Below are positions 7,502 to 61,985 of a stretch of DNA of 64,000 bases, one piece after another. The notes under the pieces were generated by a model. That model searched no databases. It was not told the DNA's origin and worked only from the letters and a program-made list of their open reading frames with translations. The DNA is from Iphione sp. A-MEVVRFRX5 (lineage: Eukaryota). How positions within the stretch are numbered: position 1 is the stretch's first letter; the number at the start of each line of letters is the position of its first letter. The position numbers and the translations under genes were made by a program. The stretch spans positions 12,028,001 to 12,092,000 of the forward strand of contig OZ320316.1 of the NCBI GenBank assembly GCA_976226885.1, in the 5' to 3' direction.

Positions 7502-7840
7502 TAACATCCTGAAGGGGCTGGTGGAGAGACTGGGGGCATCAACGGCAACCTCTCTGATGTACCTCAAACCTGGATTAACAGGTGAAGGAGTGGTTGGGAG
7601 AGACCAGGGGCATTAACGGCGACCTCTCTGATATCTGTAACATCCTGAAGGGGCTGGTGGAGAGACTGGGGGCATCAACGGCAACCTCTCTGATGTACCT
7701 CAAACCTGGATTAACAGGTGAAGGAGTGGTTGGGAGAGACCAGGGGCATTAACGGCGACCTCTCTGATATCTGTAACATCCTGAAGGGGCTGGTGGAGAG
7801 ACTGGGGGCATCAACGGCAACCTCTCTGATGTACCTCACA
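7502..7840. repeat. 136-bp tandem repeat (two related ~68-bp halves), ~2.5 copies
   Basis: TAACATCCTGAAGGGG at 7502, 7638 and 7774. Confidence 0.9.
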
Positions 7841-9148: not shown

Positions 9149-10187
9149 CTAGCAACAGGAGACACAAAACACACCAAAAATCATTATATTATTTATTGAA
9201 TTATTTACAAATTATTCACAATTATTTATCACATCAGGACTTTTCTCTGCAAGTTTAACTGTGCGGTGGAACTTCAGAATGGAGGATATACCCACATAGC
9301 GGGTGTCATGGCTCTTGGATGATACAATGTATGTATAGCCAAATACATGTACAGAACTGACCCTGTCTAAAGGGTTGTCCTACTTTCGTCAAGTATAGAT
9401 TGATCACATCTGCATTTTTTCCATACAATATCTCCTTCACTCTCCCACTGTTGATAAGGTGAGATGCATGATTTTAAAAGATTTTAGAACGGAAACTATG
9501 AAAAGACTAGTTTTGAGTATGAGGTCGGCAGGTGAATATGACCTGGGGATATTATCAAGCAGTATCTCTTCGATAACACTGACATGAAAAATTGTACGCA
9601 GCAATCAACAGCAATCTGTGTACGTTTGTAGGTATAGACAATATTTCACCAGCCAGCAGTTGCCTTCGAAATGAATTTTGAACACGAAGGCATACCCTTA
9701 TTGTGAAAACTAGCATTAATTGTGTAGGTGATTCAAATATTGTCAGACTTTCTGTGCGTTTCTCGAGTGCTGACTGTTACGTGTAGTTTCTTGGCCAGCA
9801 CATGATAAGTGATATAATGGTGCTGCACTCTTGTGTTCTCTCTCTCTTCTGATTTATTTAATATGCTTCATCTCAACTGCTTTTATGAAAACATATATTA
9901 ATTGTGTAGGTGATTCGAATATTGTCAGACTTTCTGTGCGTTTCTCGAGTGCTGACTGTTACGTGTAGTTTCTTGGCCAGCACATGATACAGTGATATAA
10001 TGGTGCTGCACTCTTGTGTTCTCTCTCTCTTCTGATTTATTTAATATGCTTCATCTCAACTGCTATTATGAAAACATATATTAATTGTGTTGGTCATTCG
10101 AATATTGTCAGGCATTCTGTGCGTTTTTCGAGTGCTCACTGTACATGCAGTTTCGTGGCCAGCCCGCGACACAGTGATATAATGGTG

Positions 10188-10262
<75 letters not shown>

Positions 10263-22900: not shown

Positions 22901-23744
22901 AGGTACTATAGAAGGCGTCCGCCATCTTGAAACTTACAAGGCCTCCACCTGAGCCGATAGATGATGCTGACATATTGTCGGCAATAGTAAAGTACAAACG
23001 ATTCTAGACATGTCCATTTCAACATCATTATTGGTGACGCTCTCTTGATGAATGGGCATCAGGGCAATAGGGCTGGGCTATGCATTATTATATGACATAG
23101 GGAGAATTATAAGATACATGTATATATTACAATGTTCTATATATACGTAGAAATGTGGAATGGTTGTCACTGTTGATAAGCACCGACTCCAGGCTCCAAT
23201 GCTTACCTTGAAGACTAAAATACGATGGTAATTGCTTTTTTTCTCATTCTGACTACCACTTTTTATGTTTACTTTCATACAGATGAGTTTTTATGTTCCA
23301 ACTGCCGCGTTCTGTCATGGTAGTTAGTGCGTATGTATGTGTATTTGTGTACATGTATATAACTGCGCATGAGTCTGTGAATGTGAGTCTGTGTGTGCAA
23401 GTATGTATGTTGGCTTGGGTGTGTATATGCTTGTTTGTATGTTTGTAAGTGTGTATGTCAGTGTGTATGTGTCAGCAAGTGTCTAAGTATATATCTATAT
23501 ATGTACATGCATGTTAATCAGTGTGTATGTTGGTGTATGTATGTATGTATGTATGTATGTATGCACGTTTGTGTATGTATATGCATGCGTCCTCCTATGC
23601 CCCATACCTGCTGGCCGCCCTCCCATTAGAGGACACTATGTGTGTGTGTGTGTCTGTGTGTGTGTGTGCGTGCGTGCTTACATGCGATACCCACCTCCTC
23701 CTCCTGTGCCCCATCCCTGCTGGCTGCCCTCCCGTCCAGGGACA

Positions 23745-23775
<31 letters not shown>

Positions 23776-26700
23776 AGTGTGTGAGTAATACCCACCTCCT
23801 CCTCCTCCTGTGCCGAATCCCTGCTGGCCGCCCTCCCGTCCAGGGACGCCTGGTCGGCCTGTCGCCGCTGTCGTCGTCGCTCCGTTCGACGCTTCGCCTC
23901 CTCCTTCATCACCCTCTGCGCGTCTAACCGGATGTTTTCTGAGAACTTCCGACGGCGGGCGCGTGTCTCGCCCTCGTCGCTGCCGCCGCCCCGCTCTCCC
24001 CGCGCCCCCTCCCGCCCGGCCTCACCCGCCAGCCCTGCTGCTGTCTTCTGTTTCCTCTCTCCTTTTGGTGATGCTTGACCAGACACTGTTTAAAGAGAAA
24101 ACCGCACTCTTTTCTTCACGCATCTATAATGAGATATCGATTTACTACGAACTGATAGTCCACACAGCAGAACCTCATGACTGGTGACACCCTAAGACAG
24201 GGGACAGCCTCAGACTGTTTACCCTGCAGGGCTGGGGACACCAGAAGACAGGACTGGGGAAACATACCCCAAGACAGGGACACTATTAGACTGTTTACCC
24301 TGCAGGACTGGGGACACAAATTTCAAAACAGCGACGCTATTAGACTGTTTACCCTGCAGGACTGGAGACATACCTCAAGACAGGGACACTATTAGACTGT
24401 TTACCCTGCAAGACTGGGGACACAAACCTTAAAACAGCAACACTATTAGACTGTTTACCCTGCAAGACTGGGGACACATACCTCAAGACAGTGGCACTAT
24501 TAGAATGTTTACCCTGCAGGACTGGAGACACATACATATGTACCTCAAGACAGGGACACTATTAGACTGTTTACCCTACAGGACTGGGGACACACCAAGT
24601 CAGGGGACCCTTTTAGACAGTTCACCAGGCAAGACTGGGGACACCACCTAAATGGGAACACTTTCACTAGGAAACTGTGCCCAGTTGTGAGGTTCTACTT
24701 TCTGAAGTATTCGTTGTTGCCTTTTACATCAACAAAGAAATGAATAAGACTTCCCACACGTTTATTCCTCTGTTTTAATGAATTGTAAGATATTCCATAC
24801 TATGGACAGTTGTGCAAATAAATAAGAGTAAATTATAGCAATTTAAGGATTTTAGATACAGTGAACCTTCAAAATGAGGTCAGCTCACTAATGAGGTCGA
24901 CTCACAAATCCAGCCAGTTATGCTGGAACTAATTATAACACATACATAATACTTCACTCTACTAATCTGGCCACCTCAATATTCCAGCCGAATCAGGATG
25001 GAACCAATGGTGACCAAATAAAATAAGGTTCCACTGTACATCACGTAATCTACTCACCATCTGCCTCATCCTCTGGACCACTTTCATCCTCATAGTCTTC
25101 GCTCTCCCAGGACCAGTCTTCAGGAGTGCTCCTCCCTCCCTGAGAAAGTGTAAATGGAGGGAGTGAAAGTAAACATGTGACCACACATGCCATCCTCCTT
25201 CCCTGAGAATGTGTAAATGGAGGGAGTGAAAATTATGGTGTAATCATCATGCATGACCCTTTCTTTCCCAGAGCATGCATAAATGGAGGGAGTGAAATTA
25301 AACATATAACCATCATACATAATCCTCCCTCTCTGCCAATGAGTGAATAAATGGAGTGAAATTAAACCTGTAACCATCATGGATAGAGTGAAGAAATGGA
25401 TAGAGTGAAGAAAATCCCTTTCCTTCTTCTCTAAGAATGAGTAAATGGAGGGAGTGAAAATAAACATGTGACCATCATATGTAAACATCCCTCCCTGAGA
25501 ATGCATAAATGGTGGGAGTGAAAATATGCATGCTATCATCACACGTAATCCTCCCATCCTGAGAATGAGAGAAAAGATGAAGAACTTAAGATCAACACAT
25601 AACTACTACCCTACCACAGGTACTTCTTCATACCTGAGAATGACCTGCCAAGTTTATTGTTCCCCACCCTCAAATGACCAGTTTCATGCTTTATTAGTAG
25701 CAGGGTGACCCAAGCTCAGCCAATCCAGCCACTACCTCCCTGCTGCAGGGCAGGTGTGTGTGTGTCTGTGTGTGCTTGCACTATCAGCCTTAGAAATCTA
25801 TAAACAAGGTATGCATGTTTGTAGGCATGTTAGCAAAGTAGTAAAATTGGCATAATTTCACCTTTAGAATATGTAAATTACTACCAAATTTACCCAGTGT
25901 CATGTGTCCATATACACAAGTATCATACATCATTTCATTTGACTGAAGAGTTTTAGAGTTATAAGGCCCACAAGAGTGTGCCAACAAGAGCCAGGATCAA
26001 GTCAGATCAGATTAGAACAACATTATTGTGTATTTATGCATACAAATACAACTAAATATAACTAGTTTCTCTTGAGGCTCTCAGAGCAAAATATTTTTGC
26101 CAGCTCAATGAAGGAATTTTTAAGGGAGATAGATAAATATCAAATGACTATGGAAAACTAGATGGATGCAAGCTGACGTTCAATGGAATATGAGAAGCAG
26201 GAACAGTCATAGGTTGACTTCCATGAAGAGAGGTTGAGGGTAGTATCACGTATGGCATCAACCGGAGGGAATGAGCCAGGAGCAGTCGGCAGCTAACGCC
26301 AATGATGAGGAGGATGAAGGTGGTGTTGATTATGGGGGAGGCATAAAGACATCTTGACCAATCGATTTGGGTCATTTCATATGAAAACAAAATGTACTGA
26401 AGCTGGTTTGCAATGGAGAATGAGAGCCTGGAACAGTAGGAGGCTGACCCCAATGACTAGGGTGTAAAAGTTTGGGGATCCATCTAGGACATTTGGACCC
26501 CTATTAGCCTGGGTCATTTTATAATAAAAGAGACCATATATAGATGAACTTACAGTTAAGTATAAGAGCCAGGAACAGCATGAGGCTGACCCCAATGACT
26601 ACGGTGTAAAGTCTGATGATCCATCTATGACATTTGGAACTATTAGCTTGGGTCATTTCTTGGGAAAAGATAACATATATATTAAATAACTAACGGCAGA

Positions 26701-29700
26701 GTCTGAGAGCAAGGAACAGCAGGAGGCTGACTCCGATGAATAGGGTGTAAAGTTTGGGCATCAATCAAGATATTAAGACCTACTGACTTGAGTCATTTCA
26801 TAAGAAAACAAAACATATATAAACTGACTTACAGTGGAGTATGAGAGCCAGGAGCAGTCCGAGGCTGACCCCAGTGATGATGGGGATGAGGGTGGTGTTG
26901 AATATGGGGAGCCACCAAATTGAGGCATTTCCACCCCGAGACCTGGGTCAATCTTGGGTGGGATGTTAAATGTTATAGTTCGAGGTTTTTTCCTTCTCAG
27001 CTCCCTCCGCCGCTCCTCTGAGGAAAATAACGAAACGTTTATAAGTTACTGTTCAAGTAAATCAAATCCAATAGACAGGGGCAGTCAGGGGGTACCCAAT
27101 AATATATCACCAAGAATTAAAACATGCATAACGCTTAAAGAAGGGATAGATGATGCTTCACCAAGAATTGTGTCCTGGATAGCGCTTCACCAGTAATAGT
27201 TTGATAATGCTTGGCAGATAATTCAGAAGGCAAATAACGCTGAGTGGTGAAATAAATCATCAAATAACGCTTCACCAAAATAGTTGACCCTCCTGTTTAT
27301 AGGAACTGAAACTTTATTGTCCAATAGATGATGTGAAAATGATGCACATGAATTAAATATCTCTATATGTATCGAATAGCGGAATAAAACTGTGTTCAAA
27401 AATCAGAGGCAGGTATGGTGTAACGCAACTTTAGAAAACAATACACCTGTCAAATATCATCCCAAATTACCCATAGCTGCCCTTCCCTGAGTAGCATTTT
27501 AACAAACTCAATCCAAAATTTGAAGATATCAAAAATAACAGTTGCTTTACAATGGGAAGTGGAGGGGTCAACTTACTTGGCGTCATCTTTTTACGTTTAA
27601 CGTTCTCTGGGGCCTTCTCCTCTTCCCCAAGGTCATGTTTGGTGACCTCGGCGCTCAAGGTCAAATCAATTAGAGCAAGGTCACGTGCTGTACTCCTGGG
27701 AGAGTCGTAGATCTCTGAGGGTGCATGGTCGGGCTTTGCCTCCTCCTCCATATTTGGTAGGGGGTCCTGCTGAAAGTGGGGAGGGAGGGGGACACAATTA
27801 GCCATGTTAATACAGGGGCGGCTGGTGATGACTGTACAAATTCTGATACAGTGTCTTCAAAATTCTAACAAATACTATCAAAATACAACTTTAAGCAATG
27901 AAATGAGGTAATTGTACTCCTGTAGTCATACAAGAAGTTCTTACAGAATGACCTTTATCTTAACGATCAATTTAGTATTTTCTTTTAAGAACATTTATTA
28001 CTTTTAGTAAAATAGGTTGTGAGACTTTATTTAACTCAAAATATTGAGTCCTAGCCTAAATGGAGAGCTAAACAAATTTAAGAAAGCTTATCGAAGAGGT
28101 ACTATGATTTGACAGATGAGTCTACGAGAAAACTACACCAATTAACCAGTAATGTCTATGGCTCAGAATTACATCAAATATTTAAGAAAATGTAAATCAA
28201 TCTGCCAATCAGACCACAAATTGCTTCTAAGCAAAATCACAAGCATCTACTGCAGTCAAGGAAAAGATTCTATCAAAAAAAAGCACGAATGTCGTTTTTA
28301 AACCTTTGAAAACTCAGTAATTATGTAAGCACCAAAATGCGTGGCAAATGTCCTTCGACCTGAAGTACGTGTTTACTCCAACATTCAAAGCACCGAAGGC
28401 TGGTTATCAAAATAAAATATTTCAATTTTTTCCAAAGAATGTAACACATTTAAAGCTGCATATCAAAGGAGCGATAGCCCTTCAAAATGAAAAGTCACAC
28501 AATTCTTTCACATATTTACCTCCATACTACTAAAATCACTCCATTTATTCAAAGATCAATGAAGAACAAACAACACCAATGATAATTTATCCAATGTAAA
28601 TTTCGAGAGAAGAATTCTCTAATGTGTAATCTCAGTTACCTGTCATGTCCACAGCTTGTATTAATTAGTACTGAGTCCCACATTATATGGACTACTTTGT
28701 ATCATAATAAAATGTGTAGTACCCAGATTCACTAGATTCTTTGCTGACCTGTTTTTCCACAATATGGAGGCCCCATACTTGTACAGTTGATACCCACAGG
28801 ATCTATTTACCATACAATAAGGGCCCCATCCTTGCATATTGGATTCTCCCATCTTATTTTCCATACTCTGAGGGATGGCTGTACAAAACATTTCCTTTGG
28901 TCATAGGATGAGAATAGATACATCGGGAATTCTGAATAAATGGAGCAATTTTCTAACCATCATGAGTCAAGTGCCATGAAAACTACAGAAGAATAATCTC
29001 AAATCAGATCAGTTTTAGTATCCGACATATCATATTAATTTCGCAAAGAGTTATTTCTGAAAAGATTTGAGACATCCTCTAACTAAAGAAAAGCTATTCT
29101 TAGAGTAAAAACCCCATGCGCACTAGTGCATTGTCCAGCAGAATATCATAAACTTTGGTCTTGTCCTGAAACATAAATAAACCACCGGATTAAGAAACAC
29201 ATGTATAGCACCAGCAACCACCTCTGGTAAGCATGCCCATATATGTATATGTATATATATTGATACAACATCCAGGCACCTAAGTGAATCTTTACCTGCA
29301 TGTCCAAGAAGAGAGAGGGCCCAGTCTTATGGGGCTATTTCTTATAAATAAAAGGGAAACATGTCAAGGGAAAGGTTGCTTTGTACATGTCAATGACTTA
29401 ATAACTAGACACAAATAGAATAAACAGTCTCATCATTCAGCCCCACTCTTTATAAATAATTAGGATCTCAAATCTTCAGTAGGATCCCTCCAATCAGGAG
29501 AGCAAAGGGACTGAGCCAACAGTATCAATAATGGCAGGAGTTCTTACAGTTAAATTAGATCAGCTTAGTTTTTGTTGTTTTCTTTTTTTTACATCAGATT
29601 AGATATACACAACGTTAAAAGGCCAGGCATGTGTAATATAAGATTTGGTTCTATATCTGTCTTTAATAAATATTTTCCAGAATAGGAGTCCTGATTAAGG

Positions 29701-53700: not shown

Positions 53701-56700
53701 AGAATAATAAGCGAGAAAAACTCATTTCCACATATTTTATTGCTGAGCCCTCGTAGGCGCGTACTGGGATGCCTTTGGTTTCATAATTCCTGGTATTCCA
53801 CCAACTTTTTATACTTCTTACTATAATTTTCTGCTTTCTGCATAGAGAGGGTGTCGATTAGATGACAAAATTCTGAGCAAATGACGGCTGGCATCAAATT
53901 GTAATAACTCTTATACCAGATTTCGAAATATTCATTAAATGCCTCCTCCGTGTTTCGCCGGGGGGAAGGGGTAAAATTTCTGCTTAATCACAACTTTATC
54001 TATTTAAATTCATCACTCATTCCCACCGCCCCCCTACTACGTTTCTCAGTAATTAGAATCAGCATTTCCCAGGACTTCGAAAGCTTTATTATTGGATACA
54101 GTGTGCTTTGCAAAATTTCATGATATGACTGTACCAATTTCTATTGTATTACATCCAACAGTACCAACTTCTATTCGTCGCATTAAAAACATGTTAACCT
54201 TTAAATCACTTGGAATTACACAACGAAAAAAGCCAGCAGCAAGACATCAAATATAAATTTATAGCATTGAAGCCAATGGTTTACGAGGAGACAAACCTAC
54301 AAGATCATAAGGGACAGTCAGATGGTTTGACAGCAATATTCTAAGAGCCCCCCCACACACACACACACACAAACACCTTGTATGAGGGGATAACAATAGG
54401 AACATTTGTGTGAAGATGCCATAGCGCCATGTGGTACACTGAACCTACCTACTGGTGTAGAGCCAGAGGTGCGTGTGTCAATCAACACATAGGTAACGTT
54501 CACATCACGCACGTGTGTGACACCCCGGACAGCTTTGAACGGGGAGACAGGAGGTGAGGGCATTATTGAACCTACCTATTGGTGTAGAGCCAGAGGTGGC
54601 GCGTGTCAATCAACACGTAGGTGACGTTCACATCACGCACATGTGTGACACCACGGACAGCAATGAAAGGGGAGACGGGAGGTGGAGGCATCACCAGGGA
54701 AACAGACTTGCGGGTGGCCCTTGAGAGGATGCGTATGCTGGAAAAAAAGAAGGAAATTTGTACAGGTACACCTCTACAATACCACTACAATACTGCTTAC
54801 CTGCCATAATTTGTACCTGCACCATACCATCTACCTACCATTTTTTTACCTGTACCATACCATCATGATTCCTGCTGAAACGCTACAAGTTCATTAATTC
54901 TTGGTGAAGCGTTATTCGCTCATCTTATAAGTGTTACGGCTGCATATGATTCTTGGTGAAGCATTATTGAGAATACTCTGACCCCCCGTGTGTGGTCACC
55001 TCTCAACAGTCATAAACAGAAGGGAAATAAGACTGACTGCTGTGGATGCTTGGTTCTTGACGATGGTGGCCTCCATCAAGGTTCGGTGTCCCACCTGAGT
55101 TGTGGGAGGTGTGTACGTTGTGTAGGTGTGTACTATACTTAACCCTTTCCATGCTGAATTCGGTGACTGCTGGCAATGCTTGGTTCTTGACAATGGTGGC
55201 CTCCGTCAAGGTTTGGTGTCCCACCTGAGTTGTGGGAGGTGTGTACATTGTGTAGGTGTGTACTGTACTTAATCCTTTCCATACTGAACTCAGTTATTGC
55301 TGGGGATGCTTGGGTCTTGATAATCATGGCCTTCATCAAGGTTCGGTGTCCCACCTGAGTTGTGGGAGGAGTGTACGTTGTGTAGGTGTAGACTGTACTT
55401 AACCCTTTCCATGCTGAACTCACCTGCTGTCCTCTCCCACAGCCACCAGGCGTGTGGACTTGCCATGTCCCGGAGCGATCTGTAGACTGGAGAGCTTGCA
55501 GCGAGCAATAGACCAGAAGGTGGTGGTCGTATTGAGGGACCAGACCGACAGCGAACGAGATGTCCCCAGGTACAGGAGGTTGTCATCGGTGAGGCCCATC
55601 CATCGCACCCCTTCCGTCGACACCACCAAACTGAAGTGAAAATCAATGGGTCTGAATACAGTCAACTCTCACTCAAAGACCGGATCACAGGAGAGACCTA
55701 ACCTGCAGAAAGACGGCTTTTAGCAAAACCCAAAGTATTATGTAATTCTATATTGAAAGAGACTACAGGAAGGGGAGACAAGACCTCAACAGAGACCAGA
55801 TTTCTCTGGTACTATAGGTGGTCTCATAGGTGAGAGTTGACTGTACTCAACTATATTCATAACGAAACCTACTGCTCATACAGTAAAAACCCCGCAGAGA
55901 TGTATCAAGCTAGGGGCTGGTAAATGCTGCTCTCTCCCTAGGTTTAGACTCATTAGGCAACATCTATATGCAGTAAGCCTGCATTTCCTGAAAACTCAGT
56001 ACATGAACTTAACTCACATCTGAACCCTATTTTGAGATGCAATTGTTTCCAAAATAATGTAAAATGTCCTCTGTATCCAAACCTACCTCATTATGAGGCA
56101 ATATGTTTAGACTAGAGACGTATCCGTTTTCAGTAAACACAAGCCTCTGGGTTTGGTCTCCTCTTTGATCTAAGGGTTTACATATTGATAGTCAACGTTT
56201 GGTGAAGTATATTTACCACATTGCCCGAGGCCGCAGGCCGAGGGAGAAAGTGGATAAAATAGTTCACCAAAAGTATAGTATCCATATTTAAACCCTGTTC
56301 TGACCATGATAATAAAGCAAAATGGATGAAATACATAAAAATCCTACCAAAAAAACAACCTCCTTGTTCAACTTTAGACACAAACGTCTTGAATCGCCAT
56401 ATTGGCAATTTACTTTTGATATGTAGAATTACATTAGCTAAAAAAAAATATCAAGTCTTGTTGGTGCAAGAGTTCATCTTCAGATAACGTGACCTTCTTT
56501 TGTGTGCTCGGGAAGGAGTAAATAGCTACAAGAACCAATAGATGGGTTAAAGGACGTCAAGACTTCCCTATTATTACTGGAGCACGATTCTCATATATGA
56601 GGTCAACATTCCAACCCCCTGACCACTAAAGTATGACACCTACAGGAATATTCCTGAATGTGGGATATACCGTACAGTCGAAACCCTATTTTTTGCGACC

Positions 56701-59700
56701 TGACACGGGAACCAAAATATTAATTTCTATATATTTGATATCCTATTTGTGATCAAATTTGCCAATGCGACCATTTGAGCTTGGACCAGAGTGGTGGCTG
56801 CAAATAAGGGTTCAACTGTAATATGACAAGATTTAACTGAGTTTATATTCCTTTACTTCTCTGCACATGTGGTATCGTTTTCATGGCATCCTGTGTGGTG
56901 GTGTCTCATTCAGTGTTGTTACCCTGATGTTACCTGGTTGGTACTGGTATGCCCACAATACACTTACCTGTAGATGGGCTCGAGGATGTCGAGTGACCAC
57001 ATGCGAATGGTGCCATCCAGTGATGATGTCAGCACCAGGGAGGTGTTCTCCGGGTGCAGGATGAGGTCTGTGACAGCTTGCGCATGTCCTCTGAAGGTGT
57101 GCACCAGCCCTCCGGTAATACTCCAAACTTTGACTGCCAAGCAAAAAAACATACATGGGTGAATCAGTAATGTAAAATGTTTTTCTTGTGGAACATTTTC
57201 CCTTATTCAAGGTAGCATCAGCAGGACCAGCGTTATTTGCCACGTTCTCCGTATGAATGAGTCATGTACACAGCTTGCTCTGAGATGTACATTGGTACTA
57301 TGGTCCATGTAAGGTAAAACCTAGCGTGAGTTTGACTCAAAAAAAAAAGTAATGTAAAAAAGGATTGGATTAACACCAGAAGGTCATATACAAAGCCCTC
57401 AGAATTACAAACCAAACCTTCAAATAAATAAAGATTACACTCCTGCACAGCTTTTAGACTCATCTACTTACCTTCTCTATCTGCCGACGCTGTCACCAGG
57501 TGGCGTGCTTGCATGGAGTAAGCACAACCCGTGATGGACATGGCGTGTGCCCTGCAGTATAGGAGAAATAAGAATAAAGAAAACCTTTGAGGTCTATTGT
57601 CCCGTCCCTACCAGGAGTGTCAAGTATACCTAATAATACATGTAAGTGGCCATTTCATGGTTGACTGCACCTCCGCTACCCACCAGACCGGCAAGATCTC
57701 TTTCTATGATATCTAGATCACTTCAAATGACATCAAAGTAGCCTGATAACAAGGACCCATATAGCAGAACAATACATCAAAACTTCTAACCATGATGGAG
57801 TGTTGGAGGGTTGGACTGAAGTACAGCGGAACCCCTCTACTACTACGACCAGCAAAGGGACTGACCATAAACTGTCCATAAATTGGGGTGTCCTTAATGG
57901 CAGGAGTATTTAAACATGAATATATAGATTTTACTTCTGTTTCTAGTTTGTCCATAATGTGGAGTGTCCTGAATAGAGGGCTGTCCGTAATGAGGGGTTC
58001 CAGTATAGTCCTAGAGTCCTCCCTCTACTGGGCAGGGGACTTAAAAATCATACAGTATAAATGTTTTTACCTGAATCTTTATCACATCCTTATCAACTGT
58101 TAATTGCAAAGTTACACTCAGGCCTCATTATCCCAAACTCCTTCCTCTCTACAGAATTTCAGCCCCTAAAACTTGTCTGGAAGCTTAGAATGTACACTAT
58201 GCGGTGGGGAACAACTAGGACCAAGGGTCCATGTAGGAAATCATTATATCAAAAATTTACAACATTTAGTACAGTGAGTTTAGGAGAAGATAGAATCACA
58301 GGTTCACGACAGAGGGTCACATGGCTGGACAGCAGCATTCCTAGCATCTGCCCACTCCTCTTGGAGGTGGGGGGCTAACTGAAGCTTACCTCTCAAAGCG
58401 GAAGAGGCTGTTGCCATCCATGTCGTAGGCTTGGAGGTCCGTATCAGAGCAGCAGTAAAGATGCTGCTGCTGCAGGTCCAGCTCCACCTTCTTCACCCAG
58501 CTACCACCCACGTTCTTCAGCTCATACTGAAAGGGATCATTAGGAGATGGCAATGGACCCATGGCGAAGTGAGGAAAAGAAACAGTTACAAAGCAAATTT
58601 TGGCAGATACCTTTCCAACTATATTGTTGTGAAAAAAAAATTACATGTGCAGTTCTACCCGTTTGGCTCAGGATTCTCATCAATTAAAGCATTCCAGGGA
58701 AAACTTGAAAATCGACATGAATTTTCCTAATCTCCCTCTGTATCTTTGTCTCTGTGTTTCTATCAGTCTGACTATTCCTTAGTTTAAGTCCTTCTCAACA
58801 GCTTTCTATCTGCCTGTTTGTCCCAGTATGTCTACCTGTTCTATTTGTCCCAGTATAGCCCTTGTTTTCTCTGACCCTATCCCTCCCTCCCCTCGTCTCA
58901 CACTCACTACATTTGACTTCTTCGGTTTCTGTATTTTGTGTGTAGTGTGTGTGTGTGTGTCTCTCTCTCACACACAATCTCTCTCCCTCCCTCCTCCCCC
59001 TCTCTCTCTGTCTCTGTCTCTCTTAATCTATTTCTGTCTGTCCTTTGCTATTTTTCTTTCCCCGGCTGGCTATCTTTTCTCTGTCTAGCCCTCCCTAGTA
59101 ATAAAAGTTGATGTATTTCACTCTGTATCTCCATGTGTCTGTTAGTCTTTTGATTTTGTGCTGCTCTGTCTACCTATCTCTTTCAAACTGTCTGTCTGCC
59201 TTTCCTTCTCGTACTTTACCCTTCCTTACTGTCTCTGTCTCGGCTTCTTGCTGTATCTCTTTCTCCCTGTCTCCATTTTGTCTATCTCTATCTCCTTATT
59301 TCTCCATCTTGAACTCTAGCACAGCTCCTCCACTTTTGTATTATCTCCCCCCTGTCTTCCCTCTTCCATCTGTCTCTGCGCCTTTCGCTATGCATGGCCC
59401 TCTCCTCTCCCTTTCTTTTCTTCTCTCTTTCTGTACTTAATAAATGCTGGGACACCCTTGTTACTTACCTTGAGTGTTAGCTTGTAGTTTGCCATGGGTC
59501 TGATCTCCTTCCAGGTCTTGTTGGCCACCTGGTGGTAGCGCCATACTTTCGTGCCCCCAACACCACCTGTGACCAGTTCATCCCTCACCGGATTGAACAG
59601 CATGAAGAGAACAGACCTCAAGTCTGCGCTCACCCTGCAGGTCTCATCAAAGTCCCGGTTCATCACCTGTAGGTCAAGACCCTATTAGATAAGAGAAGCT

Positions 59701-61985
59701 TGGTAACGCCACACTGTCATTTCCCCCAAACCACATGTGACCAGTTCATCCCTCACCGGGTTGAGAGGCATGGAGAGAACGGGCCGTAAGTCTGCACTGA
59801 CCCTGCAGGTCTCATCAAAGTCCCAGTTAATCACCTGCAGGTAAAGACCCTGTTGAATAAATCACCTTGGGACAGAAGCCCGGCCACACCGGCGGTAACA
59901 TCACCTTCGACCACCTCGTTCAACACTGCACTGACCCGCCTAATCAAGGCTGTGTTTCATCACCTGCTGGCAAAAAACCTTAGACCTTAATTAACTTACC
60001 ACCTGAGGAGAGAAGATTAGGCTAACTCAGCATGCCTTGCTAATATTCTAGCACCCCCACCTTTCCCAGAAAAGGACAGAAAAGCAGAAACCTTTTAATC
60101 TTATTAACGCACGCAGATCATCAAAACGTATTACAGTTCCACATCTTTCAACTAACCCTGCCAGAAAAAAAAATACAATAAAGTTTCCTTTTTCTGCCGG
60201 ACTGAAGTCATCTTAGCGGGAAACATATGCAGACATATGTACTAATCATGATACTTAATTCATAAATAAACCAACTACATAACATGTACTGTTGTCCAGA
60301 GACTTGTACTAGTCCTGGCTTTTATGTGTTATGCATGTTATGTGTTAAGCAGGGCCTGTACTGGCCCTGGTCATTACATTTCCAGACATTACTCCGGGTT
60401 AACCCCAGCCGAAGCTTATCTGGGACCTATACTGGTTCACGCTTGTTGGAAACCCGGGCTAGCCCCAGGCAGAGTTGCACTCTTATAAAAGAGACAATGC
60501 AGAGGAGTTGAGTTCAGTTGTTGTAAGTTTACTGAGCTGCAATAAACCTCTCAAAATCAAACTTGGTATGGCTCTGCGATCGGGGTAAACACGGGGGGGA
60601 GGGGGGTGGACAGCTATTCTGGTGAAGCGTTATGGGTGCATTTTAATTCTTGGTGAAGCATTATTTGGTCCTCAAAATCAAGGTGAAGCGTTATCCAACA
60701 TTTTCTGGTCAATGGGGATCAAGCAATATATTCTTGGTGAAGCGTTATCTGCTCTTTTTTTGAGCGTTATATATGATTCTGAGTCTTGGTGAAGCATTAT
60801 TGGGTACCCCCTGTCCCCCCTCCCCTGTGTGAACAGCATAATACTTTGATGACGTTGGGACCCCTGAGGGCTTCCCCTGTGGCGGAGGCTCCCAGCAGAA
60901 TGTCCTTCAGAGCTGTCTACCTGGCTTGTGTTTGTCTATACATGTATTAGTCTGGGCCAGGCAGATGCTCAGTCATTATTGTTCTTAAGCCGAATTCCTG
61001 TCTCGATGTTGCATGTTCATGCATGTTCACCATGGTTTTGGTGCATTTACGATAACAGCAGGAGTGTATCCATACACGTGTGTAGCGTGTAGTGTATTGC
61101 ATGTCTTCGTGTATCATATTTTTACACGCTCAGATGATTTTGCATAAGAACATGTCCACATTCCACTGTGATCCATGGCCATGTGTGTGTATGTGTGTGT
61201 GTTCAGAATGGGAACTATGGTTGATTACTGAAGTGTAAATGATGAACACGTTACACAGACATATGAGAATATTGCTTGACATCCGTACACACTACACCGG
61301 CAAAAGACCGATCGCCTCACACATAAACAATGTCGTTAATGATGCTACGACATCACAGGTCAAACTACTAAAGCCCACGTGCTGCTAGTATAAATCAACA
61401 TGGGCTGTATCTTCCCAAGCCCGAATCAACCACTTCTACTGATTAGATTTTAACGAAATATATACCAAATAAACGCTCACGGTTCAAGAAAGAAAATGAG
61501 CCATAGCATTGCATCCTATGGCCATTATTAACGATTCTATGCCATGTAAAATCTCGCCACTGATTCGAAGTAAACATGACATTTCCCACAAGTCTGCGAA
61601 TCAAAGTAAATAAAATCATTATGACATATTTCTGCGATCAGTCCATTTGGGCCTTATTCTCATGTGATAAACTTCCCTAAATTTACTCATTTATCATGTT
61701 CTTTGCTACGGAGTGGACGCAACAACAATTAAAGCTGGAATAATGGGCCTTTCCCCACAATGTAGTCAATAGTCACACTCAAGGAACACATTTACACGTA
61801 CTTCATTAACAGAGGCATACCTGAACCCTCTGAGGTGTGATGTCGTACGCTTGCTCAGAGGTCTGCTGAACTTACCTTAACCGAAAAGTCTTTGCTGAGG
61901 ACAAAGTAGACGTTATACTTCCGAGCATACACCAAGTAGGTGATCAGACGATATTCGTACTTTGGGAAGGACATGGCCCTTTGAA
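8712..61985 (-). CDS. WDR87: Multi-exon gene: WD40-repeat protein, WDR87/WDR97-like, 5'-incomplete (28 exons traced, listed separately)
   Basis: GT-AG exons with matching phases from 61985 to 37343 and from 31110 to the stop at 8712. The WD40 segment AVTSLDVCYSLRIFLSASTDGALKIWD...FLNDHGDITIAF resembles WDR87 as I recall it ([27 protein letters not shown]...FANDRGDLLVTF). WDR87 vs WDR97 orthology is not resolved. Confidence 0.65.
9720..10200. repeat. ~181-bp tandem repeat, ~2.7 copies
   Basis: ATTGTGT(A)GGTGATTC at ~9720, 9902 and 10084. Confidence 0.88.
11270..11704 (-). CDS. Exon E27, Pro/Ser/Thr-rich
   Basis: (cct)n ccag|...|gtaaaa; 435 nt, 1->1; PLEYKDTTHLLTFPSWL...PPSSPNPM. Confidence 0.78.
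11705..12150. repeat. (GGA)n / purine-rich low-complexity tract
   Basis: ~18 perfect GAG units from 11707, then a degenerate GA-rich tract. Confidence 0.95.
13526..13577 (-). CDS. Exon E26
   Basis: ccttgtcag|...|gtgagt; 52 nt, 0->1; DASDASTDMQQEETAPE. Confidence 0.8.
15827..16072 (-). CDS. Exon E25
   Basis: cgttacag|...|gtaatc; 246 nt, 0->0; RAPSAAKQRTAKPK...IIIPSEEK. Confidence 0.85.
16465..16566 (-). CDS. Exon E24
   Basis: ggtctag|...|gtaagc; 102 nt, 0->0; DKKAREKQEELKRARSARLDIKKPSLEESPTSSK. Confidence 0.85.
17517..17879 (-). CDS. Exon E23, E/R/K-rich coiled coil
   Basis: ttgtcccag|...|gtgaga; 363 nt, 0->0; VREIIKKEKK...EEELRRKREEEAK...LVDELIEK. Confidence 0.9.
18600..19180. repeat. ~157-bp tandem repeat, ~3.5 copies
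   Basis: GTTACCCCGCTACCATAGTTGAT...GCCCACAAATGTGA recurring. Confidence 0.85.
20452..20680. mobile_element. Foldback MITE with ~58-bp imperfect TIRs
   Basis: 20452-20508 and 20623-20680 are inverted; related segments occur near 21900-22090, 41450-41560 and 44630-44780. Confidence 0.65.
21267..21332 (-). CDS. Probable exon E22
   Basis: gaatag|66 nt|gtatgg, 0->0; KRAQAVPLETIPEVQSPTPPRK (an alternative acceptor lies 12 nt downstream). Confidence 0.55.
23796..24085 (-). CDS. Exon E21
   Basis: ctttaaacag|...|gtgggt; 290 nt, 1->0; SGQASPKGERKQK...DSAQEEEE. Confidence 0.85.
24190..24650. repeat. ~62-bp minisatellite, ~7 copies
   Basis: CTATTAGACTGTTTACCCTGCAGGACTGGGGACAC recurring. Confidence 0.9.
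25058..25139 (-). CDS. Exon E20
   Basis: ctttctcag|...|gtgagt; 82 nt, 0->1; GGRSTPEDWSWESEDYEDESGPEDEAD. Confidence 0.82.
26833..27017 (-). CDS. Exon E19
   Basis: ttcctcag|...|gtaagt; 185 nt, 1->0; ERRRELRRKKPRTITFNIPPKIDP...SDCSWLSYST. Confidence 0.82.
27075..27296 (+). repeat. Dispersed ~220-bp element with multimerised AATAACGCTTCACC(AAGAATT) core (representative copy)
   Basis: ACAGGGG...CCTGT-type ends. Other copies at ~14115-14337, 14775-15026, 15458-15725, 20005-20090, 54897-54992 (-) and 60589-60830 (-). Confidence 0.7.
27577..27769 (-). CDS. Exon E18
   Basis: actttcag|cag (NAGNAG) ...|gtaagt; 193 nt, 0->1; QDPLPNMEEEAKPDHAPSEIYDSPR...RKKMTP; other frames closed. Confidence 0.85.
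29296..29334 (-). CDS. Probable exon E17
   Basis: aaatag|39 nt|gtaaag, 0->0; PHKTGPSLFLDMQ. Confidence 0.5.
31027..31110 (-). CDS. Exon E16
   Basis: ctcacctgtacag|...|gtaagt; 84 nt, 0->0; VPYKAALAKEFSEGGKYVGVESPTNLQE. Confidence 0.75.
31651..31995. repeat. 86-bp tandem repeat, 4 copies
   Basis: GAAA(T/A)TGACATAT at 31651, 31736, 31822 and 31908. Confidence 0.9.
32833..34984 (-). mobile_element. 5'-truncated non-LTR retrotransposon (L2/CR1-group LINE)
   Basis: RT motifs NYRPISVL, FLDISKAFDTV, GVPQGSVLGP, YADD, YKYLG. 3' UTR with hairpin CAGCC-TTAT-GGCTG, AATAAA and A15 tail (polyT at 32833-32847). Endonuclease domain absent. Clade not determinable by eye. Confidence 0.9.
33122..34984 (-). 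pseudogene. LINE ORF2 fragment (RT) with one in-frame stop
   Basis: ORFs 34112-35002 and 33122-34087 are in the same frame, joined by QRT*VNGQESSTLKINTG (TGA at 34112-34114). Confidence 0.9.
35944..35994 (-). CDS. Probable exon E15 (reading frame unresolved)
   Basis: ggttttag|51 nt GC-rich|gtaagg. Open as VSNQSVPSEGATDDDGA (phase 1) or CLTKAFRRRAPLTTMEQ (phase 0). Confidence 0.6.
36500..37230. repeat. ~125-bp minisatellite with (TG)n, ~5 copies
   Basis: ACAATGGGACAGGGT(A/G)TTGACTGATTTTAACTG recurring. Confidence 0.85.
36857..37031 (-). mobile_element. Short insertion with terminal hairpin (Helentron/HINE-like?) inside a minisatellite
   Basis: Interrupts one ~125-bp unit; GCGCC-TAC-GGCGC hairpin at 36861-36873; diverged copy at ~13631-13775. 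Confidence 0.45.
37343..37497 (-). CDS. WD40 gene exon E14
   Basis: tctttcag|...|gtagga; 155 nt, 2->1; TDGALKIWDESKTQLAEFQLDESLTSACFLNDHGDITIAFKNHIFFIDRAK. Confidence 0.92.
37598..37790 (-). repeat. Dispersed SINE/LINE-tail-like repeat; empty paralogue of the DIRS target
   Basis: Aligns to both DIRS flanks (48233-48343 and 52709-52732); a further copy lies at ~41670-41850. Confidence 0.75.
38088..38199 (-). CDS. WD40 gene exon E13
   Basis: ctaaacag|...|gtgaat; 112 nt, 1->2; LREGITATFAGFDKAGHREAVTSLDVCYSLRIFLSA. Confidence 0.88.
38220..38680. repeat. Degenerate short-period repeat (AAAGATAACTTCAG core)
   Basis: Repeated AAAGATAACTTCA / CAGATT motifs. Confidence 0.6.
38849..39023. mobile_element. 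Diverged CAGT-ended MITE
   Basis: TA|CAGTATCCCCTT...AAGGTGACACTG|TA, with similar internal GACCACT/CTCT motifs. Confidence 0.55.
39120..39256. repeat. 69-bp perfect tandem duplication
   Basis: AGAAAAAAGCTGGG at 39120 and 39189. Confidence 0.9.
39762..39855 (-). CDS. WD40 gene exon E12
   Basis: cacttctaag|...|gtaagt (AAG acceptor); 94 nt, 0->1; DEVLLTGHVSGAILCHTLSPVVNGSNIVKPK. Confidence 0.82.
40407..40559 (-). CDS. WD40 gene exon E11
   Basis: gtccccag|...|gtaagt; 153 nt, 0->0; ISHIKHDERHQTLVTRCDLGDACLLQLWNLP...VTVFTRL. Confidence 0.88.
41017..41091 (-). CDS. WD40 gene exon E10
   Basis: ttcttacag|...|gtgagt; 75 nt, 0->0; DGRILFMDPLIKGKRYLEFRANKDA. Confidence 0.88.
42673..42853 (-). CDS. 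WD40 gene exon E9
   Basis: tttctcag|...|gtaagt; 181 nt, 2->0; PSSAVFGGKGGFHRATLE...QHRYLLLGLE. Confidence 0.88.
47072..47150. repeat. 29-bp tandem repeat, ~2.7 copies
   Basis: TCAATATGAGACAG at 47072, 47101 and 47130. Confidence 0.9.
47291..47401 (-). CDS. WD40 gene exon E8
   Basis: cttgcag|...|gtatcg; 111 nt, 2->2; SDPACRMAVWDLLDIQTKLLTEVQTKEKQGKDANDK. Confidence 0.85.
47501..47850. repeat. 69-bp minisatellite, 5 copies
   Basis: TCTGTACC(C)GGACAAAG every 69 bp; explains the spurious 23-aa-repeat ORFs. Confidence 0.9.
48344..48459 (-). repeat. DIRS right ITR plus terminal extension
   Basis: 48398-48459 matches the left ITR; 48343-48425 is a perfect 83-bp inverted copy of 48539-48621. Confidence 0.92.
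48539..48657 (-). repeat. DIRS internal complementary region (ICR)
   Basis: 48539-48621 is complementary to the right end (83/83) and 48624-48657 to the left end 52675-52708 (34/34). Confidence 0.92.
48703..49830 (-). CDS. DIRS ORF3: tyrosine recombinase (integrase)
   Basis: Catalytic motifs SCGR, HSTR, GMWSN...TFY; N-terminal core-binding region WRSKT...Y...W; overlaps the ORF2 3' end as is typical of DIRS. Confidence 0.95.
   Translation of the reverse strand: MSAEAGLQTTTSCCPCHSKMAKPSMVQQSPQHDVLPAYGVPKKSLQPVRSQAAPSNGAYRNYGASLLRAAVDLKRLSKSVKDIIFQSWRSKTRLLYDSYLNRWNTLCFVKGWDPLYPQLRQPLQFLLNLFNKGVRYSALNTARSALSAVLPKYDGVAFGKHPDTVRLLSGFFNLRPPIARLNYVWDVQLVLEFLRGWKPNKSLSLKKLTQKCLVLMLLASCGRLQTIQSVNIPNIHFLADGSVQINFSSTLKHSRKGRPASKMFLHPFTKHPSICVLRCLKSYISVTAALRGTANQLFISFKPPHRPVSTATLSRWTKEVLSMAGIDISKFTAHSTRSASVSKLSKMGVPINDIMKKGMWSNASTFKTFYLKDIA
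49629..51500 (-). CDS. DIRS ORF2: reverse transcriptase - RNase H - DAM-like methyltransferase; nonsense codon near the N-terminus
   Basis: RT YIDDILI, RNaseH SDASEFGWG / HINVLEIKAI / SDNTTAIAYIN, MT VDLFASRLN...DAFSLDW...CPPF. Upstream in-frame FVAGCLSSCKRR*QTLSSDFEVLQAIGGY with TAG at 51444-51446. Confidence 0.93.
51485..52429 (-). CDS. DIRS ORF1 (gag-like), probably internally shortened
   Basis: 314-codon ORF at the gag position; first ATG at ~52396 (MASPPFSLD); basic, Ser/Pro-rich. Confidence 0.7.
   Translation of the reverse strand: MVFIRLIPVTSMASPPFSLDSFLDEEVDMAKKKGKKTARGLKKTPQSKKRSDSVGSSEPPAKKSRDVSPDRQSKGQSTSGAPHNTPPTSPPPTLTPQTIAAANQPGSGSPGAGTTPDAPTDPLLQAILSLQQTFVSGIQSVGSSIQSLDSSLGKNLADGINVIADTVAALGDPQPCPVPRGGGDRVQDGQDGAHAAGSKSRKRKREHSVSSSGSSSGGEAASSDEGPANEPEDFLDSASAELSTDPTVGPPAKDKVVGFMDKCVHSPIGYEFFTNLKKSYPVPSQFQQQQANVQPLMALPAPPQKQVMGAQVRK
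52641..52708 (-). repeat. DIRS left inverted terminal repeat
   Basis: 52641-52702 is the reverse complement of 48398-48459 with 3 mismatches in 62 bp. Confidence 0.92.
54576..54737 (-). CDS. WD40 gene exon E7
   Basis: tttttccag|...|gtaggt; 162 nt, 2->2; IRILSRATRKSVSLVMPPPPV...HLWLYTN. Confidence 0.88.
54996..55423. repeat. 130-bp minisatellite, ~3.3 copies, starting at the E6 donor
   Basis: TTAA(C/T)CCTTTCCAT at 55139, 55269 and 55399. Confidence 0.9.
55424..55630 (-). CDS. WD40 gene exon E6
   Basis: cacttcag|...|gtgagt; 207 nt, 2->2; LVVSTEGVRWMGL...STRLVAVGEDS. Confidence 0.9.
56968..57133 (-). CDS. WD40 gene exon E5
   Basis: ttggcag|...|gtaagt; 166 nt, 1->2; canonical WD repeat KVWSITGGLVHTFRGHAQAVTDL...SSLDGTIRMWSLD. 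Confidence 0.92.
57472..57551 (-). CDS. WD40 gene exon E4
   Basis: ctgcag|...|gtaagt; 80 nt, 2->1; AHAMSITGCAYSMQARHLVTASADRE. Confidence 0.9.
57824..58003. mobile_element. Second copy of the CAGT-ended MITE, opposite orientation
   Basis: TA|CAGCGGAACCCCTCTACTA...GAGGGGTTCCAG|TA; internal sequence is the reverse complement of 63124-63301. Confidence 0.7.
58390..58526 (-). CDS. WD40 gene exon E3
   Basis: ctttcag|...|gtaagc; 137 nt, 0->2; YELKNVGGSWVKKVELDLQQQHLYCCSDTDLQAYDMDGNSLFRFE. Confidence 0.9.
59469..59666 (-). CDS. WD40 gene exon E2
   Basis: cctacag|...|gtaagt; 198 nt, 0->0; VMNRDFDETCRV...DELVTGGVGGTKVWRY...KLTLK. Confidence 0.9.
61876..61985 (-). CDS. WD40 gene exon E1 (first confidently traced)
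   Basis: ttttcacag|...|gtaagt; 110 nt, phase 1->0; QRAMSFPKYEYRLITYLVYARKYNVYFVLSKDFSVK. Confidence 0.85.

What the first reader, a model, noticed from the sequence alone, without database searches (positions are those of the whole stretch)
23590..59990. Gene-wide pattern: tandem repeats seeded at exon-intron junctions, making ladders of decoy splice sites
Seen in sequence: at least 7 of 28 exons (E2, E7, E9, E11, E19, E20, E21) have one end, including the splice site, duplicated 1-5 times into the adjacent intron. Units are 60-170 bp and are unrelated between exons. An eighth array (130 bp) starts exactly at the E6 donor. The functional exon stays intact and the copies are diverged, so these are not simple assembly duplications. 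In all five donor ladders, and at the E2 acceptor copies, read-through reaches an in-frame stop before the decoy could give a protein, so mis-splicing would be NMD-prone. Inference: either a mutational process focused at splice junctions (for example co-transcriptional R-loops or breaks), or a selective sieve in which only junction-straddling duplications survive. These arrays could be raw material for intron gain, exon duplication or tunable unproductive splicing.
Basis: partly seen in the sequence, partly recalled or inferred. Interest (0 to 1): 0.8.

Follow-up and report, generated by a model that had tools for sequence, protein, structure and literature searches.

The report
Minisatellites copying splice junctions ("mirages")
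In one worm gene for a large WD40-repeat protein, six to eight short tandem repeats each copy one edge of an exon with its splice site into the neighbouring intron. The same thing is known as "mirage" minisatellites in amphioxus, but it is several times more frequent here than random placement predicts.

Summary
The core observation holds. The gene is on the minus strand and encodes a WDR87-like WD40 protein. I validated 14 exons: all have AG/GT sites, they form one open frame, and they are collinear with relatives.

Tandem arrays copy the E2 and E13 acceptors and the E7, E9 and E11 donors. A 130-bp array starts at base +2 of the E6 donor. Two more donor ladders sit on probable exons (E15, Eb).

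- **Junction enrichment:** under a unit-length null, 1.1-2.2 junction-linked arrays are expected among 10, and 5-6 are seen (P 0.0002-0.04).
- **Exon proximity:** 9 of 10 arrays lie within 150 nt of an exon, against 3.5-4.3 expected.
- **Controls:** the same tests on four orthologous genes (Owenia, amphioxus, a nemertean, a gastropod) give observed counts close to expected.

The gene was picked after the pattern was seen, from about 700 windows. First readers noted the same pattern in other windows of this genome.

The kind is already described: amphioxus "mirage" minisatellites and the human F7 intron-7 VNTR. The cause of the enrichment is unresolved. No RNA run was listed, so decoy use is untested. 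I found no intron gain.

The parts
37343..61985 (-). Validated part of a WDR87-like WD40-repeat gene. It has 14 exons: X0 61985-61876, E2 59666-59469, E3 58526-58390, E4 57551-57472, E5 57133-56968, E6 55630-55424, E7 54737-54576, E8 47401-47291, E9 42853-42673, E10 41091-41017, E11 40559-40407, E12 39855-39762, E13 38199-38088, E14 37497-37343.
   Evidence: tblastn and profile hits to relatives of 1600-1900 aa. All 14 exons have AG/GT sites and join into one frame without a stop. Sources name the relatives 'WD repeat-containing protein 87' or 'WDR87'.
59533..60030 (-). E2 acceptor ladder. The real copy holds the acceptor at 59667/59666. A decoy copy lies at 59860-59693 (168-bp unit), and an older, more diverged copy at 60030-59861.
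   Evidence: The decoy still matches relatives at protein level (E=4e-15) and reads into TAA before the real exon.
55034..55422 (-). 130-bp x3 array that begins at position +2 of the E6 donor. Only about 7 nt (CAGCAG) at the unit ends resemble the exon end, and the copies have lost the GT.
54440..54691 (-). E7 donor ladder, 128 bp x2. The duplicated segment is 116 nt of exon plus 12 nt of intron. The decoy keeps TAG|GTAGGT and has a 1-nt deletion in its exon-derived part.
42437..42748 (-). E9 donor ladder, 156 bp x2 (76 nt of exon plus 80 nt of intron). The decoy donor GAG|GTAAGT is identical to the real one. A GT/AC microsatellite lies just downstream at 42377-42422.
40083..40451 (-). E11 donor ladder, 65 bp x5.7 (about 44 nt of exon plus 21 nt of intron). 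Four decoys keep GTRAGT and the last has decayed.
38199..38690 (-). E13 acceptor ladder of about 13 units of 37 bp. Each unit has a pyrimidine tract plus AAG/CAG and an exon-start-like tail. The last unit is the real acceptor at 38200/38199.
35191..35573 (-). Probable exon E15 (35573-35494) with a 126-129-bp donor ladder. Its phase fits E14, and it gives a weak, collinear profile hit. Two further copies at 32608-32831 lie beyond a LINE insertion.
26273..27017 (-). Probable exon Eb (27017-26833) with a 141-bp x3.3 donor ladder. It gives a weak, collinear profile hit.
25057..25568 (-). Candidate acceptor ladder with 63-66-bp units, each ending in TCTCAG|GG. It lies in front of an unverified acidic exon at about 25139-25057 that has a GTGAGT donor.
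   Evidence: There is no homology or RNA support.

Best explanation
These are 'mirage'-type minisatellites.

**Origin (inferred).** Local tandem duplications of 37-170 bp arise often everywhere in this minisatellite-rich genome, by replication slippage or unequal exchange.

**Which ones persist (inferred).** Inside a gene, a duplication survives if it straddles only one edge of an exon, because one complete exon copy then stays contiguous with its splice site. Duplications inside exons or spanning whole exons would change the mRNA and be removed.

**Effect on splicing (inferred, no RNA data).** The copies are non-functional by-products that slowly decay. Splicing would stay correct because the exon-contiguous site is favoured. 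In a donor ladder that is the first donor in 5'->3' order, as shown experimentally for human F7. In an acceptor ladder it is the acceptor paired with the real donor by exon definition. Occasional use of a decoy would give a frameshift or an early stop, and nonsense-mediated decay would remove the transcript.

**The excess at exon edges (cause unresolved).** I attribute it mainly to three things:
- survivorship, because DNA next to exons is shielded from deletion and transposon turnover;
- slower divergence of the selected exon copy;
- post hoc choice of this gene.

I do not attribute it to a junction-seeking mutational process.
For: - **Anatomy is shown.** Head-to-tail units contain the junction, the authentic exons are intact and the frame is open.
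- **Arrays are common everywhere.** They occur at the same density outside the validated gene part: 27 arrays, 12% of the window.
- **The copies decay.** They show 8-25% divergence, GT is lost at E6, the last E11 rung has decayed, and there is a 1-nt deletion in the E7 decoy.
- **At least one array is old.** The E15 ladder predates a LINE insertion that split it. The longest intron holds a DIRS element with long open RT and recombinase frames. Removing the long introns from the null raises the expectation from 1.1 to 2.2.
- **The same kind occurs in orthologues at the random rate.** An amphioxus 96-bp array lies at the orthologous E7 donor, and an Owenia 44-bp ladder lies at the orthologous E9 acceptor.
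- **Precedents exist.** Amphioxus mirages do not disturb mRNA (PMC3087553, PMC3902484). In F7 the most upstream donor is chosen (PMC1557585).
Against: - Even with both long introns removed from the null, 6 junction-linked arrays against 2.2 expected gives P=0.008.
- Nine of 10 arrays lie within 150 nt of an exon, against 3.5-4.3 expected (P 0.0002-0.002).
- The Owenia orthologue has a similar array density but shows no such crowding. Shielding near exons should apply there too.
- Junction arrays are not clearly older than purely intronic ones.
- First readers noted the same pattern in several other windows of this genome. These notes are unchecked.
- Silence of the decoy sites is assumed, not shown. 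None was listed when I asked for RNA runs.
Confidence: 0.55

Rival explanations
1. A mutational process in this genome makes tandem duplications preferentially at or next to exons. For example, slippage or flap-processing errors could be phased by nucleosomes positioned on exons (many units are 126-168 bp or about half that), or breaks and R-loops could be linked to co-transcriptional splicing. Junction-straddling arrays would then be born more often than elsewhere.
For: - Junction-linked arrays are 2.7-5.5 times the unit-based expectation.
- Nine of 10 arrays lie within 150 nt of an exon.
- Two arrays end exactly at a junction: E6 donor +2 and the E13 acceptor.
- Orthologous genes tested with the same code show no excess.
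- Similar notes exist for other windows of this genome (unchecked).
- Independent arrays sit at the orthologous E7 donor in amphioxus and at E9 in Owenia.
Against: - This is one gene, chosen after the pattern was seen among about 700 windows. At P of about 0.002, one or two such genes are expected by chance.
- I extended the E13 array by eye after noticing how close it lay to the exon.
- Breakpoints are too diverged to show any signature.
- Three arrays adjoin dinucleotide microsatellites, which suggests ordinary slippage.
- Array density inside the gene equals that outside it.
Confidence: 0.3
2. The ladders are kept by selection because they act in splicing. Extra U1 or U2AF binding sites could strengthen recognition of the neighbouring exon, or decoy sites could tune the share of unproductive transcripts that are degraded.
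For: - Many decoy sites keep consensus signals: E9 is identical, four of five E11 decoys are intact, and all E13 units keep an AG.
- Ladders cluster on one gene.
- Decoy-exon regulation and intronic minisatellites linked to splicing choice are known elsewhere (PMC4039745 for C. elegans; decoy exons from my own knowledge).
Against: - Retention of 2-9-nt motifs at 80-90% identity is what neutral decay predicts.
- The E6 copies lost their GT.
- Units are unrelated and show no shared motif.
- Ladder positions are not conserved in orthologues.
- I have no RNA evidence.
Confidence: 0.1
3. The arrays are assembly artefacts, such as haplotypes laid in series or collapsed and expanded repeats.
For: The genome is repeat-rich, the window has an assembly gap at 6471-6632, and one array outside the gene is 100% identical (7502-7838).
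Against: Copies differ by 8-25%, units are 37-170 bp with up to 13 copies, the decay is ordered, and a LINE insertion sits inside one array. Haplotype duplications would be longer and nearly identical.
Confidence: 0.03

Closest known systems
Amphioxus 'mirage' minisatellites. First described at Adh3 by Canestro et al. 2002 (as cited in PMC3087553), then in globins BflGb6/BflGb9 (PMC3087553) and in PGBD5 and troponin C (PMC3902484).
   Same: Both are tandem repeats of 10-160 bp whose units span an exon-intron boundary at either the 5' or the 3' edge of an exon. Many units keep AG/GT signals, the authentic exon is left intact, and units are 81-100% identical. My own run also found one in the amphioxus orthologue of this very gene.
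   Different: The animal here is a lophotrochozoan (an annelid according to earlier scan notes), not a cephalochordate. One gene carries 6-8 such arrays, which is above random expectation. Normal splicing and length instability were shown for amphioxus but could not be tested here.
Human F7 intron 7 37-bp VNTR (PMC1557585)
   Same: The first repeat element spans the exon-intron boundary, so the authentic donor is followed by a ladder of identical pseudo-donors. The most upstream donor is the one used. The layout matches the E7, E9 and E11 ladders.
   Different: F7 is a single polymorphic locus in a mammal and has been dissected experimentally. Here there are several ladders, acceptor ladders are included, and no expression data exist.
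[quoted passage not shown]
   Same: Both involve short tandem duplications inside genes that copy AG|GT signals. They could in principle create new introns or exons.
   Different: No new intron is seen here. All junctions that carry a ladder are ancient positions shared with Owenia and mostly with amphioxus.
Intronic minisatellites linked to alternative splicing in C. elegans (PMC4039745)
   Same: Both are minisatellites in introns close to exons.
   Different: From that paper's title and abstract only (body not read), its minisatellites are linked to intronic regulatory motifs and are not described as copies of the splice junction.

Membership tests
Mirage minisatellite (amphioxus type) | Head-to-tail array of two or more units of tens to about 160 bp | tested here: met
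   TRF, local alignment and self-BLAST agree. Units are 37, 65, 128, 130, 156 and 168 bp, with 126 and 141 bp on the probable exons.
Mirage minisatellite (amphioxus type) | The unit spans an exon-intron boundary and includes the splice signal | tested here: met
   Met for E2, E7, E9, E11 and E13 against a validated exon model. Probably met for E15 and Eb. The E6 array only abuts the donor (+2), so it is not strictly met there.
Mirage minisatellite (amphioxus type) | The authentic exon stays intact and the normal mRNA is made | tested here: inconclusive
   The exons are intact and in frame. The mRNA could not be examined, because none was listed when I asked for RNA runs.
Mirage minisatellite (amphioxus type) | Length instability or polymorphism between haplotypes or tissues | not testable with these tools
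   Only one assembled sequence is available, and no read data could be obtained.
F7-type donor VNTR | The first element spans the exon-intron boundary and is followed by consensus pseudo-donors | tested here: met
   E9 has an identical GAG|GTAAGT decoy. E11 has four GTRAGT decoys. E7 has a TAG|GTAGGT decoy.
F7-type donor VNTR | The most upstream donor is the one selected, and the pseudo-sites are silent | not testable with these tools
   No RNA data are available. The upstream site is the only one compatible with the conserved protein.
Intron gain by tandem duplication | A new intron whose ends derive from a duplicated AGGT and which is absent from relatives | tested here: not met
   Intron positions at the junctions that carry ladders are shared with Owenia and mostly with amphioxus.

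The most novel reading that the evidence does not exclude
This worm genome has a process, mutational or selective, that concentrates minisatellite birth or survival on exon edges at several times the random rate. Under this reading, ladders of copied splice sites are a systematic, genome-wide feature of its genes and not scattered accidents. The feature would be absent from the orthologous genes of Owenia, amphioxus, a nemertean and a gastropod.
Probability: 0.3. Interest if true: 0.75.

Novelty: new member of a known kind. Interest (0 to 1): 0.5.

Why it matters
Arrays that copy splice junctions are natural experiments in how the spliceosome picks one site among near-identical neighbours. They are also one proposed source of new introns, exons and splice variants. 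They have been described gene by gene in amphioxus and at a few human loci.

This work shows the same thing in an annelid-like genome, in Owenia, and in the amphioxus orthologue of the same gene. So mirages look like a general by-product of minisatellite-rich invertebrate genomes.

If the excess at exon edges seen here held genome-wide, it would point to an unrecognised link between exon position (chromatin, replication or splicing) and tandem duplication. It would also give hundreds of ready-made test cases for models of splice-site choice and NMD.

Tried and rejected
**Searches that returned nothing**
- RNA evidence: the look-up of sequencing runs listed none, so I did not use read laying.
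- The closest relative of the gene (P0001, 76% identical at E6) sits on a 131-kb ENA contig whose DNA could not be fetched. I therefore could not compare introns between close species.
- Three orthologue look-ups failed because only the longest isoform is on record.
- The original mirage paper (PMC117041) is not held. I cite it through PMC3087553.
- Single exons gave no useful match: Pfam found only generic WD40 hits and the one exon searched against PDB sequences (E2 region) found nothing significant.

**Analyses that were uninformative or misleading**
- My first null placed whole arrays at random. It overstates the expectation, because it is the duplicated unit, not the grown array, that must capture a junction. 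I replaced it with a unit-length null and report both.
- Breakpoint microhomology: the sequences are too diverged to read.

**Readings I rejected**
- The in-frame-stop argument is uninformative, because a stop within 22-52 random codons is the usual outcome.
- The 86-bp array at 31650-31994 is not a junction copy. It derives from a dispersed repeat.
- The 54-bp array at 24249-24644 has splice-like motifs but no supported exon.

Full report
**What the region is.**
- The window is eukaryotic, about 41% G+C, and very rich in minisatellites. TRF gives 59 rows that merge into 27 arrays with period 20 or more, covering 12% of the 64 kb.
- Open frames with WD40 character lie on the minus strand.
- A search of 1.84 billion representative proteins with the exon at 55668-55423 found 77 relatives. 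These include full-length proteins of 1600-1900 aa from gastropods, bivalves, annelids, nemerteans, echinoderms and amphioxus. Some are named 'WD repeat-containing protein 87' or 'WDR87' by their sources.
- No listed protein is the window's own. Identity to all lophotrochozoan relatives is similar, at 50-55%.
- Earlier notes of this scan call the genome an annelid. I did not test that.

**Gene model.**
- tblastn with relatives, and a profile built from 22 full-length relatives, place collinear exons from 61986 down to 37341. Weaker hits lie at 35574-35488, 27751-27587 and 26994-26872.
- I fixed the boundaries by eye on AG/GT signals. Fourteen exons (X0, E2-E14) then join into a single frame with no stop codon, and every junction is canonical.
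The exon before E2 is at 61985-61876. The stretch near 59.9-60.0 kb is an old copy of E2, not an exon.
- Downstream of 37.3 kb the relatives are poorly conserved.
- Minus-strand Glu/Lys/Arg-rich frames at 17.5-17.9 kb and 15.8-16.1 kb suggest the gene may run well past 23590.
- Introns hold a DIRS-type element (reverse transcriptase plus tyrosine recombinase, 48.7-52.5 kb) and a LINE reverse transcriptase (33.1-35.0 kb).

**The arrays at junctions.** Local alignment, multiple alignment and self-BLAST agree.

| Exon edge | Array | Detail |
|---|---|---|
| E2 acceptor | 168 bp x2, plus an older third copy | The copy at 59860-59723 repeats 26 nt of intron plus 113 nt of exon at 86% identity, with the acceptor CTGCAG\|GTGAT intact. 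|
| E7 donor | 128 bp x2 | 116 nt of exon plus 12 nt of intron, repeated at 90-92%. |
| E9 donor | 156 bp x2 | 76 nt of exon plus 80 nt of intron at 88%. The decoy donor is identical to the real one. |
| E11 donor | 65 bp x5.7 | About 44 nt of exon plus 21 nt of intron. Four decoys keep GTRAGT. |
| E6 donor | 130 bp x3 | The array begins at donor position +2. Its copies read ACTGAGT and ACCGAAT where the exon has GGTGAGT. Only a CAGCAG at the unit ends recalls the exon end. |
| E13 acceptor | 37 bp, about 13 units | See below. |
| E15 donor (probable exon) | 126-129 bp x2.8 | See below. |
| Eb donor (probable exon) | 141 bp x3.3 | Exon Eb at 27017-26833. |

- The decoy copies of E2, E7, E9 and E11 still score against the protein profile. 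The E2 copy scores E=4e-15.
- The 37-bp array that TRF reports at 38343-38676 continues in decayed form to 38199. Its last unit is the real E13 acceptor, and each unit carries a pyrimidine tract, an AAG or CAG, and an exon-start-like tail.
- A probable exon E15 (35573-35494) has a phase that fits E14. Two more copies of its donor ladder lie at 32608-32831, on the far side of the LINE. The ladder is therefore older than that insertion.
- A candidate acceptor ladder at 25130-25568 precedes an unverified acidic exon.
- Units of different arrays are unrelated.
- Copies differ by 8-25%. That rules out assembly duplication of haplotypes.

**Points in the finding that carry less weight than they seem.**
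- Polarity. The real donor is always first and the real acceptor always last. This follows from geometry, because after a junction-straddling tandem duplication only the copy contiguous with the rest of the exon can give the normal mRNA.
- In-frame stops. They do follow each donor within 2-67 nt, and the E2 decoy reads into TAA. Units of 22-52 codons of unconstrained sequence would usually contain a stop anyway.

**Is it more than chance?**
- *First null.* I placed whole arrays at random in the validated span. This gives 2.0-3.3 junction hits against 5-6 observed, P 0.02-0.07. That null is too generous, because the duplicated unit, not the grown array, has to contain the junction.
- *Unit-length null.* In collapsed coordinates it expects 1.03-1.28 of 10 arrays in the validated span, against 5 observed (P 0.0015-0.004). 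It expects 1.4-1.7 of 15 when the probable exons are included, against 7 observed (P 0.0001-0.0005).
- *With E13 counted.* The result is 6 observed against 1.08 expected (P 0.00016). If both long, transposon-bearing introns are removed from the available space, it is 6 against 2.19 (P 0.008). With 5 counted the range is 0.002-0.04.
- *Proximity to exons.* Nine of the 10 arrays lie within 150 nt of an exon, against 3.5-4.3 expected (P 0.0002-0.0016). The median distance is 31.5 nt, against 248-448 expected.

**Controls.** I fetched the orthologous genes of Owenia fusiformis (L001), a Branchiostoma hybrid assembly (L002), Tubulanus polymorphus (L003) and Batillaria attramentaria (L004). I ran the same TRF settings and the same tests on them.

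| Locus | Arrays | Junction-touching, observed vs expected | Within 150 nt of an exon, observed vs expected |
|---|---|---|---|
| Owenia (L001) | 19 | 1 vs 1.80 | 9 vs 7.7 |
| Amphioxus (L002) | 6 | 1 vs 0.98 | 2 vs 3.2 |
| Nemertean (L003) | 2 | 0 vs 0.28 | 0 vs 1.2 |
| Gastropod (L004) | 3 | 0 vs 0.26 | 2 vs 1.5 |
| Window, same routine | 10 | 5 vs 1.16 (P 0.003) | 9 vs 3.5 (P 0.0004) |

- The tests are therefore calibrated, and this gene is an outlier among its orthologues.
- The two control hits are themselves genuine mirages. A 96-bp x1.9 array copies the donor of the amphioxus exon orthologous to E7. A 44-bp x3.6 ladder copies the acceptor of the Owenia exon orthologous to E9.

**Caveats on the statistics.**
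- The gene was singled out because of the pattern, from a scan with notes on 709 windows of this genome. At P of about 0.002, one or two such genes are expected by chance.
- First readers noted 'systematic' junction ladders in several other windows, and 165 notes fit 'decoy splice'. These notes are unchecked. The null itself predicts about one junction array per gene of this size, so single examples prove nothing.
- I extended the E13 array after seeing how close it lay to the exon.
- The exon copy under selection diverges more slowly, which lengthens the time a junction array stays detectable.
- DNA next to exons is sheltered from deletion and transposon turnover.

**Mechanism.**
- *Shown.* The anatomy, the intact exons, the decay of the copies, and the age of at least one ladder relative to a LINE.
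- *Inferred.* The arrays arise by ordinary slippage or unequal exchange. Three of them adjoin dinucleotide microsatellites. They persist because a junction-straddling duplication leaves the mRNA unchanged. Decoy use is rare and ends in decay of the transcript.
- *Open.* An exon-focused mutational bias remains a serious rival. It would explain the crowding near exons and the two arrays that end exactly at a junction. It could involve nucleosome-phased replication errors, since many units are 126-168 bp or about half that. I have no direct evidence for this, and the breakpoints are too diverged to read.
- *Regulatory role.* Retention of the splice motifs is what neutral decay at 80-90% identity predicts. 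This neither supports nor rules out a regulatory role.

**Comparison with what is known.**
- Tandem repeats spanning exon-intron boundaries were named 'mirages' in amphioxus Adh3. They were later reported in amphioxus globin, troponin C and PGBD5 genes, with units of 10-160 bp, 81-100% identity, retained AG/GT signals and normal mRNA (PMC3087553, PMC3902484).
- The human F7 intron-7 37-bp VNTR has its first element across the exon boundary. Its ladder of pseudo-donors is ignored in favour of the most upstream site (PMC1557585).
- Duplication-based intron gain (PMC4974935, and the Gao and Lynch work as cited in PMC3087553) is the proposed evolutionary outcome.
- No such gain is visible here. 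The ladder-bearing junctions are old intron positions shared with Owenia and mostly with amphioxus.
- I found no paper in the held library that tests genome-wide enrichment of such arrays at exon edges, or that reports them in annelids.

**Verdict.**
- The kind of feature is already described.
- The density in this gene exceeds random expectation and exceeds that in four orthologues.
- Whether that reflects a property of the genome cannot be decided from one window chosen post hoc.

Noticed in passing
window 48341-52732 (minus strand ORFs 49632-51443, 48706-49830, 51488-52450): A DIRS-type retroelement with long open frames for reverse transcriptase and a tyrosine recombinase sits in the 7.2-kb intron between E7 and E8.
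   Followed up: partly
window 33125-35011 (minus), flanked by 32608-32831 and 35191-35553: A LINE-type reverse-transcriptase element is inserted into the 126-bp E15 donor ladder and splits it. Copies of the unit lie on both sides, so the ladder predates the insertion.
   Followed up: yes
window 31650-31994; also 22022-22099, 20477-20541, 44679-44741: The 86-bp x4 array (94% identical) is built from a dispersed repeat that occurs elsewhere in the window on both strands. It is a transposon-derived satellite, not a local copy of unique sequence.
   Followed up: partly
L002 8578-8764 (Branchiostoma orthologue) and L001 8259-8436 (Owenia orthologue): The amphioxus orthologue has a 96-bp x1.9 array that copies the donor of the exon orthologous to E7. 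The Owenia orthologue has a 44-bp x3.6 ladder that copies the acceptor of the exon orthologous to E9. These are independent mirages at or near the same exons in other phyla.
   Followed up: partly
window 61985-61876; 17502-17897 and 15818-16120 (minus strand): The gene is larger than the finding's range. A conserved exon lies upstream at 61.9 kb, and the first ~120-200 residues of relatives (depending on the relative) have no match in the window. Glu/Lys/Arg-rich minus-strand frames far downstream may be its low-complexity C-terminal exons.
   Followed up: partly
window 7502-7838; 6471-6632: A 136-bp x2.5 array has 100% identical copies and lies about 900 bp from an assembly gap of 162 N. It is either very young or an assembly effect.
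   Followed up: no
window 42377-42422; about 54360-54400; 10191-10261: Dinucleotide microsatellites lie directly beside three minisatellite arrays (the E9 ladder, the E7 ladder and the 182-bp array at 9699-10193). This hints that slippage-prone tracts seed the larger duplications.
   Followed up: no
window 54755-54864 and 47500-47849: Two further arrays (33 bp x2, and 69 bp x5.1 with a CAG|GTAC motif in each unit) lie 20-100 nt upstream of the E7 and E8 acceptors without including them.
   Followed up: partly
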